NCBI RefSeq assembly: GCF_002571385.2
Contig: NW_019218266.1
Coordinates: forward strand, 8,843-72,842
Direction: 5' to 3'
Length of the DNA stretch: 64,000 nucleotides
Source: Stylophora pistillata
Lineage: Eukaryota
In this document: in pieces, positions 25,885 to 30,021 of the stretch
Numbering within the stretch: the stretch's first letter is position 1
Layout: the number at the start of each line of letters is the position of its first letter
Program-made: the position numbers and the translations under genes
The notes under the pieces: model-generated
The model's database searches: none
What the model saw: only the letters and a program-made list of their open reading frames with translations
Told to the model about the DNA's origin: nothing

Positions 25885-28800
25885 ATGCTGTCTACCTTGC
25901 CAGCACAAAGTTCATCTAAGGAAAAATTGAAAGTTTTGCTTTTGTCATCTGAGTGGTGGTCCAGGAAAGGAGGAATATCAACACTGAACAGAAAACTTGC
26001 CATTCAGTTAGCTAATCACCCGTCTGTTGCGGTTACAGTCTTTCTTCCCGAGTGCAGTGAAGAAGAAAAGGAAGAAGCTGTGAGACATAACATTAATATT
26101 GTTAAAGCCATTAGGCGGGTTGGGTTTGAGGAAAACGTTTGGCTTTGCTTTCCACCTAGTGATCTCCAGATTGACTTTGTAATTGGTCATGGAGCTGTCC
26201 TCGGACCACCAGCCAAACTTATCAGCGACTATCGCCAATGCAACTGGGTCCAAATCGTTCACACCATACCAAAAGAACTGGGAATGTTCAAAACTTATGG
26301 GAATCCCATTTTGAAGAGTGAGATGAAGCACAAAGTTGAAGTCGAACTTTCAGAAATGGCTGCCTTAGTCGTTGGAGTTGGGCCAAAATTGAGTGAAGCT
26401 TTCCAAAGTTATCTTGGCTGGAAGAATCCCGATGATGTTGTTACCCTTACCCCTGGAATTTTCAACGAATACTCAAACATAGAACATGTACCTATAGATA
26501 AGACAAAACGTCGAGTTTTGGTATATGGTCGTGGAGATGAGGAAGATTTTGTTCTGAAAGGTTTCGACATCGCAGCTAAGGCTGTAACCGATTTAAGTGA
26601 CACAATCCTTATCTTTGCCGGTGCTCGCGAGGAAGACTTTCAACAGGTTACTAAGAGGTTTTTGGAGTGCGGCATTTCTCCAGAAAACCTGCAAGTAAGA
26701 GGTTTCCTTAGTGATAGAAAGGAGTTGATCAAAGTATTTAGTGAAGTGGATCTTGTCTTAATGCCCTCAAGAGCTGAAGGCTTTGGACTCACAGGCCTTG
26801 AGGCTTTATCTGCTGGCCTGCCTGTACTCGTGAGTCGGAACACGGGATTTGGAGAAGCGCTAACCAAGATTCCATTCGGCGATTCTTATGTGGTCAACTC
26901 CAAAGATGCAACGGTGTGGGCTAAAGCTATAAAAGAGGTCTTGGGGAAAGTCCACAAAAGGCGAATTCAGGAATCTAACTGTCTGCGTACTTGGTACAGG
27001 GAAGAGTACGACTGGAAGACCCAATGCGAGAAACTGGTTGAAAAATTGTTCAGTGTCTTCCATGGTATGTATTTAACCAAGTTCAACTGAATTGCAGACT
27101 TAGCATTCTCGTAAGAGTGGGCTGCAGAAAGACATAACAAATTTAACCAAAATTTGTTGTTAGCGCACGATACAAACATTAATGGGATGGTTATTAAATA
27201 AATGAACCCCCTTCGGGCTTGCTGCCATATGTCGACTACTAATGTCCTTAGTTGAGAGATTGTCCTCGAAATTCCAGTTTTGCCCTCCAGATTTCGCTTT
27301 TCGTGCAATTATATATTTTTCGGACTATATCTCAGCAGCGGACAATATCAGTCGACATACCAGCCACCAGAAGGGGTTTATGTACTACATAATTTGAGCT
27401 TTACGATTAGTTAGCATCATTTATTATTATTTTTTCTCAGATAAGCAGGAACAAGAAATGTCTGGCGTGGATGTGTATTCAAACCAAAGACGGAGAATCT
27501 GTCCCAGCCCTCCGCAAGAGAGAATGGTAAACAAACCTAGCACCCCTTGGCAAGGAGGCATTGATAAAGCATGTTTATGCCACACGAGGAAACAGCAAAT
27601 AGAAGACGAAGCAGATCCTCGGAAGCAATTACGGGAAGAGAAAGAAGGACCGCCAGAAAGGTCTGGAGGTGGACAGCGTCAGCAATGTGTAACTCACCAA
27701 CACAACCTTCACGTCCAGGAGATATATATCCGGGAAGAACTTTCTCTCCAAGTAGAAGAATCTGTTCAGGAATCAAGATTGGAGGGTGGACCAACGATTA
27801 TAAAAGCTAAAGCAAACGAAAACATCACGAGAAACGTGAGTACTAGAGGAATGCAATCAGCTGATTCTACAGGACAAGAGGCACTGACGACAAGGCTGGA
27901 GTCTTTTCTTGGTGACTCAAAAGATCAGTGTGAAAAAACAACCGTCATGGAAGAAGAGGAATTGACGCATTCCAGAAGTTTAAGTTTTCTTACCAAACCG
28001 GAAGGAAGATCAGAGAGATTGGAAAATGCATTTTCACAGATGCATCAAAAGTCCCTTGACGAGGCAGGTGCGCGTTGCAAGGAAGAAGATGGATCAAAGA
28101 AAAGCGAAGCAATCGTAGAGGAATGGAAGAAAAGTTTAGAGGAGGAGCAACAGCTGAGAGCAAGGATGGAAGGGGAATTAAGGCAAACACAAACTCTATG
28201 TACCGAGATGGAAGAAACAATTCATGAACTTGTGCAAACGTGTCTCGCTTCTCAGTCTGACAATGATTTACAAACGTTGAAGGAACAGGAACGAAACAAC
28301 AATGAAAACATTGCACGTGACCTAAAACAGATGTTACGGGTAGAGCAGGAAGCTAAGACAGAAGCTGATAACTTGGCAGAAGTGCGGAAAGAAAACACTA
28401 ACTTGAGAGAGAGATTTGTTGCTCTTGAACAGAACTATGTAGCGCAGATGATTGCGAATAGTCATTTGAACAATTTGAGAGAGCAGGAATTGAGAGAAAA
28501 GGAAACTCATATAGCTGAACTACTGGACGCATTAGACGAAACGCAACATGCAAAGCTTTCAAGGGAAAAAGAACTGACCCTTGCAAGGAAACGCTGTGTA
28601 ATGCTTGAACAACAACTGGAAAGCGAAAGATACGTCCCTGTGTCAAGACAATGGCACCCTCAAGCAGACGACTGGAAAATTCCACGAGAGCACATCGTCT
28701 TGGGTGAGATTTTAGGTCAAGGAGGCTGGGGCACCGTAGTAATGGGAACGTTTCGCGGTTGCCAGGTTGCCGTTAAGCAAATGCACAATCTGATTCTCTC

Positions 28801-30021
28801 GCCTCACAATCGTGCATTGTTTGAACGAGAAATGAGGATTGTATTTCGCTGTCACCATCCGAACATTTTGCAGTTTATTGGTGCCACGTTTGACGATGGT
28901 AGTCCTTTATTAGTCACTGAATTACTCGACGCCTCATTAAGAAATCTTTTGGAAGAACGACCATTACCTTTAAAAGAAACAGTTACCATTGCTCTGGATG
29001 TTGCTAAAGGCTTAAACTACCTTCATCTTAACACGCCTCTTCCCATCTTACATCGAGATGTCACCAGCACTAATGTCTTGCTCTGGAAGAGAGATCAACA
29101 CTGGAGAGCTAAGCTGGGTGACTTTGGAGCGGCAAATTTTATGCGCAAGTGTATGACTGTTGCACCGGGTGCATTGTCCTATTCAGCTCCAGAAACTTTC
29201 ACCCGTAACCAGACAACGAAGGTAAAGTTGCTTTCCATTCATTTTGCAAATCAGTTCAATGAAAAAAAGAGATCGCGAAGTAAGAGCCCAAGGAAGAATT
29301 GTAGAAAAGACTCGTGATGCGACAACGTTTCAGCCGTTCTTCGACGTGACTACTTTCGACACAAGACATTGTGGAGTGACTGTGCCTTTGCTTTGCGTCT
29401 ACACACTTTCAGTAGAATAGTAAACATTACGAAAGGTTACACCGAGGGTGAGAGTTTCCCTTTTGTTGTTGCAAAGCATTGTTCTGCAAGAACATCGACT
29501 TCATTAGAGGAAAAACCCAACGACTTACTGAAAGTTATTGAAACGAACGCTAAAGCAACCCACACGACTAAAGTAACTATACTGTATTTAAAGAGCATTT
29601 CCGAAACCATTACGGGGATCATATAACTCAAGACCAAACTATCTCCTTGCCCCATGTATGTAATCGGCCGATCCGTTTGTCCCATGCCAAGGTTCTGACG
29701 GGTTCTTGAAGATATAAATCTCCCTGAAATTTTATTAGGTAGTAAGACATTTAAAATATCACCAGAGACCGTAGCGTGTAACGAAAAATCGACGCTATAC
29801 TTTTCTCTGACTAGGTTGACGTGTACAGTTTTGGCGTCCTGCTGTGTGAGATGTGCATTAGAGAACTTCCGGATCCCGAAATACGCCATGAGCAGATTCT
29901 CAAGGTATCAAGTAGTGCAGTTCAAGGGCTTATTCGGCGGTGTGTTTTACGCAATCCCGAAGAACGCCCCTCAGTGAGGGATGTCATTCCGTTTCTTAGC
30001 TGGATTAAAGAAAGGGATTAA
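25885..30021 (+). CDS. GT4 glycosyltransferase - coiled-coil - TKL-type protein kinase fusion (~1055 aa)
   Basis: Exons 25885-27064 (phase-1 donor gtatgt), 27441-29221 (acceptor ttctcag, phase-0 donor gtaaag) and 29815-30021 join in one frame. GT4 motifs GGISTLN, KGFD, EGFGLTGLE (E-x7-E). Kinase motifs GQGGWG, VAVK, HRDVTSTN, DFG, APE, DVYSFG, PEERP. Confidence 0.85.

What the first reader, a model, noticed from the sequence alone, without database searches (positions are those of the whole stretch)
25885..30021. Spliced fusion of a GT4 glycosyltransferase, a long coiled coil and a catalytically intact kinase: candidate undescribed immune signalling enzyme
Seen: three separate ORFs in the track join through canonical GT-AG sites with matching phases (27064/27441 phase 1, 29221/29815 phase 0) into one ~1055-aa protein. 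The GT4 keeps the E-x7-E donor-binding motif (EGFGLTGLE, 26776-26802). The kinase keeps the Gly loop, VAVK, HRD, DFG and APE. About 250 aa of E/K/Q/L-rich coiled coil precedes the kinase. Known: group-1/GT4 glycosyltransferase domains are reported as unusual N-terminal domains of expanded coral NLRs (Acropora digitifera), and TKL kinases (RIPK/IRAK-like) are immune transducers. Inference: here the GT module is wired to a kinase with no NACHT domain, suggesting an oligomerising switch that couples sugar transfer or nucleotide-sugar sensing to phosphorylation. I know of no characterised animal protein with this architecture.
Basis: partly seen in the sequence, partly recalled or inferred. Interest (0 to 1): 0.85.

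Follow-up and report, generated by a model that had tools for sequence, protein, structure and literature searches.

The report
Coral glycosyltransferase-coiled-coil-kinase fusion gene
RNA data confirm that this coral gene joins a bacterial-type "conflict" sugar-transferase, a long helical rod and a protein kinase into one 1055-residue protein; I found this combination in no published table, and an immune role is plausible but untested.

Summary
Three ORFs (25885-27064, 27441-29221, 29815-30021) are joined by GT..AG introns in phase 1 and phase 0. Spliced contigs from three RNA runs of three studies show both junctions. A presumed DNA run is colinear with the genome.

The 1055-aa product has four parts:
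- a full-length GT4-conflict glycosyltransferase (PF20706, 2.7e-80), with a confident GT-B model nearest MshA;
- about 190 disordered residues;
- about 207 helical residues;
- a TKL kinase with all catalytic motifs, nearest TNNI3K rather than RIPK/IRAK.

The same layout and splice phases recur at four other loci: a second locus in this genome and three scaffolds from other coral samples. A fifth relative is one uninterrupted ORF with a decayed kinase. All kinase-linked GT4 domains form one clade (support 100). Its sister clade holds a GT4 exon followed by NACHT-WD40. dN/dS is 0.34-0.64.

Both parents are large coral expansions: at least 191 GT4 candidate loci and dozens of coiled-coil-kinase paralogs in this genome. 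The 2021 catalogue of GT4 architectures and my protein searches list no GT4-kinase combination.

Verdict: a real, conserved, expressed fusion, and a new variant of a known kind. The immune role, the enzyme activities and oligomerisation are inferred, not shown.

The parts
25861..27064 (+). Second exon of the transcript, first coding exon: 24 nt of 5' UTR, start ATG at 25885, then the whole GT4-conflict glycosyltransferase domain (393 codons plus the first base of a split Asp codon).
   Evidence: Acceptor AG at 25859-25860, with the same loose 5' sequence in three RNA runs. PF20706 2.7e-80, 270.7 bits, profile 1-385/385. AF2 pLDDT 90.7, Foldseek top hit MshA 3c4q at TM 0.75.
25966..25992 (+). 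N-terminal KGGISTLNR loop of the GT4 domain; the Gly-Gly phosphate-binding loop is part of the EW..GG(I/L)ST(L/F)NR signature of the conflict clade.
   Evidence: Nearly invariant in 40 homologues. The same motif occurs in the bacterial sequence of GT4.aln quoted.
26527..26562 (+). GR...KG segment (R216, K225) of the C-terminal Rossmann half. In characterised GT4 enzymes the equivalent Arg and Lys bind the donor diphosphate (established knowledge of the family).
   Evidence: G215, R216, K225 and G226 are conserved in at least 90% of homologues.
26776..26802 (+). E-x7-E motif (EGFGLTGLE; E298 and E306) of the nucleotide-sugar donor site.
   Evidence: Coordinates. It aligns to EDFGLTPIE of the mannosyltransferase 2f9f. 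E306 is at least 93% conserved and E298 at least 75%.
27065..27440 (+). Intron of 376 nt, GT..AG, phase 1. It contains the stop codon (27088-27090) that ends the genomic GT ORF.
   Evidence: Skipped in contigs of X3, X11 and X2, not in X15. The same donor position and phase occur in L001, L002, L003 and L014, and in the non-kinase paralogues L005-L007.
27441..28006 (+). Start of the large middle exon: about 190 residues of E/Q/S/R-rich linker, predicted disordered, with no Pfam domain.
   Evidence: AF2 pLDDT 30-40 over exon residues 1-188, with short low-confidence helices. Composition. No family.
28007..28627 (+). About 207-residue helical, probably coiled-coil rod (exon-2 residues 189-395).
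   Evidence: AF2 helices at 189-215, 219-269 and 274-395, pLDDT mostly 70-89. 3.5-residue hydrophobic periodicity gives p=0.02 against shuffles.
28628..29221 (+). A short connecting segment, then the kinase domain from the Gly loop to just past APE: GQGGWG 28715-28732, VAVK 28766-28777, HRDVTSTN 29051-29074, DFG 29120-29128, APE 29186-29194.
   Evidence: Pkinase 2.7e-27, profile 4-175. Nearest solved chain is TNNI3K at 7e-27. Motif coordinates; family-wide motif conservation.
29222..29814 (+). Intron of 593 nt, GT..AG, phase 0.
   Evidence: Skipped in X3, X11 and X2 contigs, colinear in X15. Conserved donor ACNAAG|GTAAA and acceptor CAG|GTTGACGTGTACA in L001-L003 and L014.
29815..30021 (+). 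Last coding part: the rest of the kinase C-lobe (DVYSFG 29818-29835, ERPS 29962-29973) and stop TAA 30019-30021.
   Evidence: PK_Tyr_Ser-Thr profile 186-256. Coordinates.
30022..30700 (+). 3' UTR, at least up to the end of the stretch that was laid. ATTAAA signals lie at 30717 and 30799.
   Evidence: RNA contigs continue to 30700 and beyond. Polyadenylation-signal scan.
19772..20443 (+). Truncated paralogous GT4-conflict fragment, 66-67% identical to residues 130-345 of the main gene. It lacks the N-terminal third and diverges at its C-terminal end. It is a probable pseudogene remnant of a local duplication.
   Evidence: tblastn; PF20706 profile 126-323 at 5.9e-43; ORF text.

Best explanation
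This is a genuine, expressed coral gene with one non-coding 5' exon (not in the assembly) and three coding exons. It encodes a cytosolic 1055-aa protein with two enzyme domains: an N-terminal GT4-conflict retaining glycosyltransferase, a disordered linker, a long helical rod, and a C-terminal TKL protein kinase.

It arose by exon shuffling. The GT4 domain is a single-exon cassette whose phase-1 donor is conserved across the coral GT4 expansion. In one clade that cassette became spliced to a member of the equally expanded coral coiled-coil-kinase family, instead of to the NACHT-WD40 found beside a sister-clade copy. The fusion has been kept under purifying selection in several corals.

Proposed mechanism (inferred, about 45% for the immune or conflict role): the rod brings copies together so the kinase domains trans-autophosphorylate, as in other dimerisation-activated TKL kinases. 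The catalytically intact GT4 domain transfers a sugar from a UDP-sugar onto a host or invader target. That makes it a NACHT-independent member of the coral conflict repertoire.

Shown here: gene structure, splicing, expression, domain identity and integrity, conservation of the fusion, and its single origin on the GT side. Inferred: both enzyme activities, oligomerisation, and any role in immunity.
For: - Splicing and expression: both junctions occur in contigs of three RNA runs from three studies. Single contigs span all three coding exons. No joint occurs in the presumed DNA run.
- Start codon: the spliced 5' exon carries an in-frame TGA.
- GT domain: PF20706 at 270.7 bits end to end. It keeps 76 of 77 near-invariant family columns, including GHG, GR..KG and E-x7-E. 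AF2 pLDDT is 90.7, with a GT-B fold nearest MshA, BshA and glycogen synthase.
- Kinase: Pkinase match plus all catalytic motifs. Nearest solved relatives are TNNI3K, B-Raf, CTR1 and MLK4.
- Rod: long confident helices and heptad periodicity at p=0.02.
- No signal peptide or transmembrane segment.
- Conservation: the same exon order, splice sites and phases occur in L001 (same genome), L002, L003 and L014. A single-ORF GT4 + degenerate-kinase relative is P0274 in L013.
- Origin: the kinase-linked GT4s form one clade with SH-aLRT 100, and the sister clade contains the NACHT-WD40-linked L006. A single clade of the linked kinases is not rejected (AU p=0.27).
- Cassette: the donor position is conserved in non-kinase paralogues.
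- Selection: dN/dS is 0.34-0.64 for the GT, linker, rod and kinase parts.
- Conflict context: the GT4 family is described as a conflict or immune effector expanded in corals (PMC8195603). A sister-family kinase in Oculina carries a Macro domain instead (P0097).
Against: - No biochemical or expression-after-challenge data exist. The immune role rests on family context alone.
- The self-association test of the rod gave no verdict (0.28 against a mark of 0.32).
- Logan contigs cannot prove that every mRNA molecule is full length. Low-depth contigs retain intron 1 or intron 2 (X3 records 23 and 26). A retained intron 1 would encode a GT-only product that stops at 27090.
- The PF20706 model is permissive at its cut-off. 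It rings in all 14 control prokaryote genomes, so membership rests on the very high end-to-end score and clade-specific motifs.
- The kinase tree does not itself recover the GT-linked kinases as one clade.
- The second copy in this genome has an in-frame TGA in its GT exon, and L013 is decayed. The fusion is therefore not always maintained.
- HRDVTSTN lacks the Lys of the canonical HRDLK. This is a family-wide feature shared with the active kinase TNNI3K.
Confidence: 0.8

Rival explanations
1. These are two neighbouring genes: a stand-alone GT4 gene that ends at the stop at 27090, and a separately promoted coiled-coil-kinase gene. The joined contigs would then be read-through transcripts or assembly chimeras with no protein-level meaning.
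For: The genomic GT ORF has its own stop 24 nt into the intron. Low-depth RNA contigs retain intron 1 (X3 record 23). ORF-based gene callers list the two parts separately in other corals. Contigs cannot show transcript starts or ends.
Against: A precise GT..AG junction that removes the stop and keeps the frame occurs in three runs of three studies. The donor, acceptor and phase are conserved in five loci at 57-70% protein identity. Exon 2 begins with no ATG context of its own until 27458. P0274 carries both domains in one uninterrupted ORF. The linked GT4s are monophyletic.
Confidence: 0.05
2. The fusion is real but is not an immune or conflict gene. It could be a metabolic or housekeeping bifunctional enzyme in which glycosylation and phosphorylation act on one substrate, as in bacterial GT4 + WaaP/Kdo-kinase fusions of LPS core synthesis. 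Or it could be a kinase whose GT domain is only a regulatory UDP-sugar-binding module.
For: The language-model look-alikes of the single-ORF relative P0274 are bacterial Glycos_transf_1 + Kdo (RfaP) fusion proteins of about 670 aa (score 0.84, a lead only). The nearest solved GT folds are metabolic enzymes: MshA, BshA, glycogen synthase and sucrose-phosphate synthase. No death-fold, TIR, NACHT or repeat sensor is present. The gene is expressed in ordinary holobiont RNA samples.
Against: The kinase is a standard eukaryotic TKL protein kinase with an APE motif and the C-lobe, not a Kdo/WaaP-type kinase. Both parent families show traits typical of conflict genes rather than housekeeping genes: huge lineage-specific expansion, tandem clusters, many pseudogenes, variable partners (NACHT, Death, Macro) and fairly high dN/dS (PMC8195603). 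The clade is absent from the best-annotated Acropora, Montipora and Porites hits.
Confidence: 0.15
3. The gene is a neutral by-product of rampant exon shuffling in two fast-evolving families. It is transcribed but on its way to decay, with no selected function for the combination.
For: The second copy in this genome has a TGA in its GT exon. L013 has lost the rod and the catalytic Asp and DFG. A truncated GT4 fragment lies 6 kb upstream. Many family members carry stops. L002 against L003 gives dN/dS 0.87 for exon 2.
Against: Four loci keep all three open exons and their splice sites: the window, L002, L003 and L014. The window copy retains every catalytic motif and 76 of 77 conserved GT columns. 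dN/dS is below 1 in every part against both relatives. The gene is expressed in several independent studies.
Confidence: 0.08

Closest known systems
Coral GT4 (glycos_transf_1) lineage-specific expansion and its fusions (GT4+NACHT, GT4+Death+GTPase, GT4+TRADD-N+LRR, DED+TPR+GT4). Sources: Kaur, Iyer, Burroughs and Aravind 2021, PMC8195603; Acropora T2T genomes, PMC12314368.
   Same: It has the same GT4-conflict domain (PF20706 end to end), placed N-terminally. The domain is a single-exon cassette with the same phase-1 donor. The sister clade in this genome is followed by NACHT-WD40.
   Different: The partner here is a coiled coil plus a TKL kinase. There is no STAND NTPase, death-fold, TRADD-N or repeat sensor. 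The eukaryotic GT4 table of the 2021 paper contains no 'kinase' entry. PMC12314368, which lists TPR, LRR, ankyrin and NACHT partners, showed zero occurrences of 'kinase' in the full-text search (GT passage read).
Coral coiled-coil + TKL kinase family: hundreds of members in Oculina, Porites and coral-sample metagenome records, with tandem clusters on contigs C266, C284, C978 and C444 of this genome. It includes a Macro + coiled coil + kinase protein of Oculina patagonica (P0097).
   Same: The rod and kinase module is homologous (42-66% identity) and has the same family motifs (GxGxWG, VAVK, FEREM, HRD(I/V)(S/T)SxN, D(Y/F)G, APE). The kinase domain is split by the same phase-0 intron.
   Different: Most members have no recognisable N-terminal domain, and the nearest paralogues in this genome have no GT4 within about 8 kb upstream. 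None of the 15 long representatives scanned carries GT4.
Amphimedon queenslandica Death+CARD+DED+TRADD-N+Coiled-coil+Pkinase proteins (source data of PMC8195603).
   Same: The logic is the same: a conflict or apoptosis-type N-terminal module, then a coiled coil, then a C-terminal protein kinase.
   Different: The N-terminal modules are death-fold adaptors, not an enzyme. Homology of the sponge kinase to the coral family was not tested here.
TNNI3K and the MLK/RAF branch of TKL kinases.
   Same: TNNI3K is the best solved-structure match (7e-27). It shares the unusual catalytic loop that lacks the canonical Lys (HRDLNSHN against HRDVTSTN). Regulation by adjacent helical or zipper regions and dimerisation is established knowledge for these families.
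   Different: Alignment to the solved chain is confined to the kinase domain. TNNI3K has ankyrin repeats, from my own knowledge and not tested here. No animal TKL is known to me with a glycosyltransferase domain. Orthology was not tested.
Bacterial Glycos_transf_1 + Kdo/RfaP (WaaP-type) kinase fusion proteins of LPS core biosynthesis.
   Same: They are the only other GT4 + kinase-fold single polypeptides that surfaced. They are the nearest feature-space clusters to the relative P0274.
   Different: The score of 0.84 is below the tool's reliability mark. The kinase is a sugar kinase of the Kdo family, not a TKL protein kinase. There is no coiled coil. They are an architectural analogue, not kin, and no homology test was made.
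MshA and BshA (retaining GT4 enzymes that use UDP-GlcNAc).
   Same: They are the best structural matches to the GT exon model (TM 0.75 and 0.69-0.73). They share the E-x7-E motif, the Arg/Lys pair and the Gly-loop layout.
   Different: Sequence identity is only 16-18%. The acceptor specificity of the coral domain is unknown.

Membership tests
GT4-conflict (Pfam PF20706) / CAZy GT4 retaining GT-B glycosyltransferases | End-to-end match to the family profile, well above cut-off and above generic GT profiles. | tested here: met
   270.7 bits, E 2.7e-80, profile 1-385/385, against 72 bits for Glycos_transf_1. Caveat: at its 26-bit cut-off the model also rings in all 14 control prokaryote genomes.
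GT4-conflict (Pfam PF20706) / CAZy GT4 retaining GT-B glycosyltransferases | GT-B fold of two Rossmann-like halves. | tested here: met
   AF2 with a 40-sequence alignment gives pLDDT 90.7 and pTM 0.88. Foldseek top hits are MshA 3c4q (E 1.8e-19, TM 0.75), BshA, glycogen synthase, SPS and WaaG.
GT4-conflict (Pfam PF20706) / CAZy GT4 retaining GT-B glycosyltransferases | Donor-site residues: Gly-Gly loop, GHG His, Arg/Lys pair, E-x7-E. | tested here: met
   G29-G30, H102, R216, K225, E298 and E306 are present. 76 of 77 columns that are at least 93% conserved in 59 homologues are retained.
GT4-conflict (Pfam PF20706) / CAZy GT4 retaining GT-B glycosyltransferases | Glycosyl transfer from a nucleotide sugar. 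| not testable with these tools
   Needs a recombinant-enzyme assay.
GT4-conflict (Pfam PF20706) / CAZy GT4 retaining GT-B glycosyltransferases | Placement within the coral lineage-specific expansion linked to conflict-type partner domains. | tested here: met
   At least 191 candidate loci in this genome. The tree places it beside a clade that includes a NACHT-WD40-linked copy.
Eukaryotic protein kinase, TKL group | Pkinase / PK_Tyr_Ser-Thr profile match over the whole domain. | tested here: met
   Exon 2 matches Pkinase 4-175 at 2.7e-27. Exon 3 matches PK_Tyr_Ser-Thr 186-256 at 2.5e-05. The exons were searched separately.
Eukaryotic protein kinase, TKL group | Catalytic residues: Gly loop, beta-3 Lys, alpha-C Glu, HRD Asp, catalytic-loop Asn, DFG Asp, APE, subdomain IX Asp, subdomain XI Arg. 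| tested here: met
   GQGGWG, VAVK, FEREM, HRDVTSTN, DFG, APE, DVYSFG and ERPS are all present. The Lys of HRDLK is absent, as in TNNI3K and the whole coral family.
Eukaryotic protein kinase, TKL group | Nearest characterised relatives are TKL kinases. | tested here: met
   TNNI3K 7e-27, then B-Raf, CTR1 and MLK4; LysM-type receptor kinase and CERK1 rank lower.
   No RIPK or IRAK chain is among the 60 best solved matches. No death-fold domain appears in the Pfam scan.
NLR / STAND receptors | Central NACHT or NB-ARC NTPase. | tested here: not met
   No NTPase family was found in any exon. The linker is predicted disordered.
Coiled-coil oligomerisation module | Long amphipathic helices with heptad periodicity that self-associate. 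| tested here: inconclusive
   Helices at 189-395 with pLDDT 70-89. Periodicity p=0.02. The homodimer prediction scored 0.28, under the 0.32 mark, so there is no verdict.

The most novel reading that the evidence does not exclude
GT4-coiled-coil-kinase proteins define a NACHT-independent branch of coral innate immunity. In this reading a single cytosolic polypeptide couples glycosylation of an invader or host target, or sensing of a UDP-sugar or foreign glycan by the GT-B cleft, to oligomerisation-driven TKL kinase signalling. That would be an animal 'sugar-transferase kinase' with no characterised counterpart, assembled by exon shuffling from a bacterially derived conflict domain.
Probability: 0.25. 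Interest if true: 0.75.

Novelty: new variant of a known kind. Interest (0 to 1): 0.52.

Why it matters
Corals have greatly expanded a bacterial-type glycosyltransferase as a front-end module of immune-like proteins, and nobody knows what that domain does. A version wired directly to an intact protein kinase, without the giant NTPase-and-repeat scaffold, is a compact and tractable entry point. It is 1055 aa and soluble, with two assayable enzyme activities. Asking what it glycosylates and whether the two activities are coupled becomes directly testable.

It also gives a clean example of how conflict gene repertoires diversify. One single-exon cassette with a fixed intron phase is spliced to different effector genes in sister clades: NACHT-WD40 in one, coiled-coil-kinase in the other.

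If an immune role were confirmed, it would add a signalling route relevant to coral disease and stress biology. If not, it remains a well-documented lineage-specific fusion.

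Tried and rejected
- **5' exon.** The 30-nt end of the spliced 5' exon was searched in the window (up to 3 mismatches) and the whole assembly (up to 2 mismatches), with no match. It may lie in unassembled sequence.
- **Coiled-coil homodimer** (complex prediction, two copies of 28007-28627): score 0.28 against a mark of 0.32. 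This is no verdict and counts neither for nor against.
- **Single-sequence AF2 of exon 2.** It was useful only for the helical rod. The kinase part was unmodelled (pLDDT under 40), because the domain is cut by the intron and no alignment was given.
- **Joined protein.** There is therefore no full-length model and no exact-sequence look-up of an existing annotation. Exons were searched separately by reference.
- **Long family representatives.** Fifteen long representatives (724-2398 aa) of the kinase family were scanned for an N-terminal GT4, and none has one.
- **Neighbouring paralogues.** Regions upstream of the four nearest kinase paralogues and downstream of the three nearest GT4 paralogues were fetched. 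No second domain of the other family was found.
- **Monophyly of the GT-linked kinases.** It is not recovered in the tree but not rejected by the AU test (p=0.27). The number of fusion events on the kinase side stays open.
- **Literature.** Searches for GT4-conflict or PF20706, coral kinome or TKL expansion, and GT-kinase fusions in cnidarians found nothing specific.
- **RIPK/IRAK-like kinase.** Rejected on the solved-structure ranking.
- **Trans-spliced leader as the source of the 5' loose end.** I consider this unlikely, because the loose part is up to 124 nt long. Spliced-leader trans-splicing is not known to me in scleractinians (my own knowledge, not tested).

Full report
**1. The observation**

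The junction sequences are canonical:
- The first donor reads CATG|GTATGT at 27064/27065 and the first acceptor TTTTTCTCAG|ATAAG at 27440/27441.
- The second donor reads ACGAAG|GTAAAG at 29221/29222 and the second acceptor CTGACTAG|GTTGAC at 29814/29815.

The first intron is in phase 1; the split codon G+AT encodes Asp. The second intron is in phase 0. The coding total is 3165 nt, or 1055 codons, ending in TAA at 30019-30021.

**2. RNA evidence**

Twenty public runs from a coral ("organism A", "coral metagenome") hold this stretch. Runs labelled RNA hold 0.72-0.81 of its sampled words, which is about the exon share of the stretch. The three runs X15-X17, of unrecorded kind, hold 0.94-0.95.

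I laid four runs on 24800-30700. Both joints appear as GT..AG skips of 376 and 593 nt in contigs of X3 (polyA RNA-seq), X11 (polyA RNA-seq, another study) and X2 (a third study, kind only guessed to be RNA). Neither joint appears in X15, whose single 5.3-kb contig is colinear with the genome.

- X2 record 18 (3904 nt) covers 25938-27063 | 27440-29219 | 29813-30700.
- X11 record 3 (2878 nt) covers 26680-27063 | 27440-29219 | 29813-30526.

Low-depth contigs retain intron 1 (X3 record 23) or intron 2 (X3 record 26); these look like unspliced precursor. All three RNA runs also carry the same loose sequence 5' of position 25859. So a further exon is spliced onto the acceptor AG at 25859-25860. The last 30 nt of that exon contain a TGA in frame with ATG 25885, which makes 25885 the start codon.

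That exon is not in the window or anywhere in the 397.6-Mb assembly. The region 25391-25784 has almost no RNA coverage, as expected for an intron. Limits: these are assembled contigs, not reads. They show presence of the spliced form but not transcript ends or levels.

**3. The domains**

Each exon was searched on its own, by reference.

*Glycosyltransferase.* The first coding exon is an end-to-end match to Pfam PF20706, "Family 4 glycosyltransferase in conflict systems" (270.7 bits, profile 1-385 of 385), far above the generic Glycos_transf_1 match of 72 bits.
- With a 40-sequence alignment, AlphaFold2 gives pLDDT 90.7 and pTM 0.88.
- Foldseek places the model among retaining GT-B enzymes: MshA (TM 0.75), BshA, glycogen synthase, sucrose-phosphate synthase and WaaG.
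- It keeps 76 of 77 columns that are at least 93% conserved among 59 relatives. These include G101-H102-G103, G215-R216, K225-G226 and E306. E298, the first Glu of the E-x7-E motif at 26776-26802, is conserved in at least 75%.

*Linker and rod.* The middle exon begins with about 190 residues that have no domain match and are predicted disordered. About 207 residues of long, confidently predicted helix follow (exon residues 189-395, pLDDT mostly 70-89). They show a 3.5-residue hydrophobic periodicity (p=0.02 against shuffles).

*Kinase.* The kinase domain carries GQGGWG, VAVK, FEREM, HRDVTSTN, DFG and APE in the middle exon, and DVYSFG and ERPS in the last exon. Its best solved relatives are TNNI3K (7e-27), then B-Raf, CTR1 and MLK4. 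It is therefore a TKL-group kinase, but not RIPK- or IRAK-like. The missing Lys after HRD is shared with TNNI3K (HRDLNSHN) and with the whole coral family (HRDISSAN is the commonest form).

There is no signal peptide or membrane segment, and no NACHT, death-fold or repeat domain.

**4. The two parent families**

*GT4.* This genome has at least 191 GT4-conflict candidate loci. All 60 scored with the profile are near full length, and most are one open exon.

*Coiled-coil kinase.* The genome has dozens of close coiled-coil-kinase paralogues in tandem clusters on contigs C266, C284, C978 and C444.
- In the 1.84-billion-protein representative library, 601 clusters match the middle exon at E<=1e-30.
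- The named members among the hits of the separate 5.8-billion-protein search come from Oculina and Porites.
- Most members are a rod plus a kinase with nothing recognisable in front. One Oculina protein has a Macro domain there (P0097).

**5. Is the fusion conserved?**

Yes. Five further loci carry a GT4 domain followed by a kinase of this family.

| Locus | Source | What it shows |
|---|---|---|
| L001 (C153) | same genome | GT exon 60% identical, then a rod-kinase ORF and the last kinase exon, same order and strand; the GT exon has one in-frame TGA |
| L002 | Tara coral-sample scaffold | same three-exon layout; GT 69-70%, middle exon 58-63% over its whole length, last exon 69-73% identical |
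| L003 | Tara coral-sample scaffold | as L002 |
| L014 | 862-kb contig of another assembly | intact GT exon, the same phase-1 donor and acceptor, a much longer rod, an intact kinase and the last exon |
| L013 (P0274, 644 aa) | Tara scaffold | GT4 and kinase in one uninterrupted ORF; the rod is gone and the kinase decayed (HRN, DNE) |

Donor and acceptor sequences and phases are the same in the window, L002, L003 and L014. For L001, both donors and the second acceptor match.

By contrast, the four nearest kinase paralogues in this genome have no GT4 within about 8 kb upstream. The three nearest GT4 paralogues have no kinase downstream.

**6. Origin**

In a tree of 60 GT4 domains, all six kinase-linked copies, plus seven short-contig relatives, form one clade with SH-aLRT 100. 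Its sister clade includes L006. The GT exon of L006 is followed 1.3 kb downstream by an 1816-aa open frame with NPHP3_N/NACHT and WD40. That matches the GT4+NACHT architecture known from corals.

The GT exon ends at the same ...(H/N/R)G|GT phase-1 donor in the kinase-linked copies and in the non-kinase paralogues L005-L007. The domain therefore behaves as a shuffled single-exon cassette.

The kinase tree is poorly resolved and does not group the linked kinases. An AU test does not reject their monophyly (p=0.27). A single fusion event is thus supported on the GT side and compatible on the kinase side.

Pairwise dN/dS against L002 and L003 is 0.34-0.38 for the GT exon, 0.42-0.55 for the rod, 0.47-0.48 for the kinase part and about 0.63 for the linker. 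This is purifying but relaxed selection, as is usual for fast-evolving families.

**7. What is already known**

Kaur, Iyer, Burroughs and Aravind (eLife 2021, PMC8195603) defined this GT4 clade. They showed its bacterial conflict-system contexts and reported an expansion of over 500 paralogues in Acropora digitifera with variable fusions. They predicted that it is an effector that modifies invader molecules.

- Their eukaryotic GT4 table lists GT4 alone, GT4+NACHT, GT4+Death+GTPases, GT4+VWA+protease, DED(+TPR)+GT4 and sGTP+GT4. Their TRADD-N table adds GT4+TRADD-N+LRR and related forms.
- In their GT4 source-data file, the first 'kinase' and 'Pkinase' strings fall in later, prokaryotic tables. 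Neither the bacterial nor the eukaryotic GT4 table holds one. That file does not cover Stylophora, Pocillopora or Orbicella.
- The same source data list sponge Death+CARD+DED+TRADD-N+coiled-coil+Pkinase proteins.
[quoted passage not shown] Its full text showed zero occurrences of 'kinase' in the search that found it.
- A search of the 5.8-billion-protein collection with P0274, which allows partners of 354-1127 aa, returned no other protein with both GT4-conflict and Pkinase. Annotated Acropora, Montipora, Porites and Oculina hits carry GT4 with Death, ZU5 or PF20694 instead.
- Further literature searches found nothing on such a fusion.
- A language-model search pointed to bacterial Glycos_transf_1 + Kdo/RfaP kinase fusions as the nearest architectural look-alikes. 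The score of 0.84 is below the tool's reliability mark, so this is a lead only.

That is consistent with the picture here.

**8. How it most likely works**

Shown: a soluble protein with two intact-looking catalytic domains separated by a disordered linker and a long helical rod. It is expressed, conserved as a unit, and derived from two conflict-type expansions.

Inferred: the rod brings molecules together so that the TKL domains activate one another by trans-autophosphorylation. This is the established logic of zipper- or dimer-activated TKL kinases, and the activation segment here has Ser, Thr and Tyr candidates. The GT4 domain would use a UDP-sugar to glycosylate a target; its nearest folds, MshA and BshA, use UDP-GlcNAc, which is a weak hint.

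Whether the GT domain is effector, sensor or both cannot be told from sequence. The one computational test of rod self-association gave no verdict. I put the real-fusion claim above 0.9 and the immune or conflict role at about 0.45.

**9. Verdict**

This is a new variant of a known kind: one more partner for the coral GT4-conflict cassette, and one more N-terminal head for the coral rod-kinase family. It is of moderate interest because it offers a small, assayable form of a domain whose role in coral immunity is unknown.

Noticed in passing
window 6060-7166 (+); degenerate copy at 450-1205 (-): An intronless 368-aa ORF with an N-terminal hydrophobic leader followed by Cys. It is a full-length choloylglycine hydrolase / penicillin V acylase family match (PF02275, 2.3e-57). 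A decayed, repeat-invaded copy lies about 5 kb upstream on the other strand.
   Followed up: partly
window 19772-20443 (+): A truncated GT4-conflict fragment (profile 126-323), 66-67% identical to the main gene. It starts right after a 9-N gap and loses similarity to the main gene near residue 345, about 20 codons before its stop. It looks like a pseudogene remnant of the kinase-linked clade.
   Followed up: partly
window 14452-15312 and 21900-22618 (+), plus 17920-18471 (+): Two near-identical copies of a coiled-coil ORF with no Pfam family (a weak crescentin-rod hit only). They point to a local tandem duplication or an assembly duplicate around the N gap at 21234-21876. A downstream ORF ends in a C-x2-C-x12-H-x3-C zinc-finger-like motif that recalls NEMO/optineurin-type fingers (my own recollection, not tested).
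   Followed up: partly
window 24800-25390: Contig word depth reaches the hundreds to tens of thousands in all four runs, with many loose ends. This is a high-copy repeat immediately upstream of the gene, inside its first intron.
   Followed up: no
window 25859 (spliced 5' exon): The 5' non-coding exon seen in three RNA runs (loose end up to 124 nt) has no match in the window or the whole assembly. The promoter and first exon of this gene appear to be unassembled.
   Followed up: partly
window 44588-45400 and 48600-49169 (+); 55393-56001 (+): Ordinary neighbours: an F-box exon and WD40 exons of an F-box/WD-repeat gene, and a homeodomain exon of a homeobox gene.
   Followed up: partly
window 1224-1730: All three long ORFs here (both strands) are built from a repeated 7-residue (21-nt) unit, for example KKYTAAN. 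This is a minisatellite-like array next to the decayed hydrolase copy.
   Followed up: no
L013 2039-3973 (Tara scaffold; protein P0274): A single 644-aa ORF fuses the GT4 domain directly to a kinase. The kinase has lost the rod, the catalytic Asp (HRN), DFG (DNE) and the Gly loop. It is a decayed or pseudokinase derivative of the same clade. Its cluster has 154 member sequences.
   Followed up: partly
L006 1602-2861 and 4174-9621 (G000 C438): The sister-clade GT4 exon is followed 1.3 kb downstream, on the same strand, by an uninterrupted 1816-aa frame with NPHP3_N/NACHT and WD40. It is probably a GT4-NACHT-WD40 gene of the known coral type.
   Followed up: partly
L007 3533-4228 (G000 C651): A Harbinger-type transposase fragment (DDE_Tnp_4 + HTH_Tnp_4) sits about 0.5 kb downstream of a GT4 paralogue. 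This may bear on how the cassettes move.
   Followed up: no
L014 862-1464 and 1-832 (-): The GT4-rod-kinase gene in the other assembly lies next to a TRIM-like gene (RING, B-box, filamin repeats) on the opposite strand, and retrotransposon reverse-transcriptase ORFs lie downstream.
   Followed up: no
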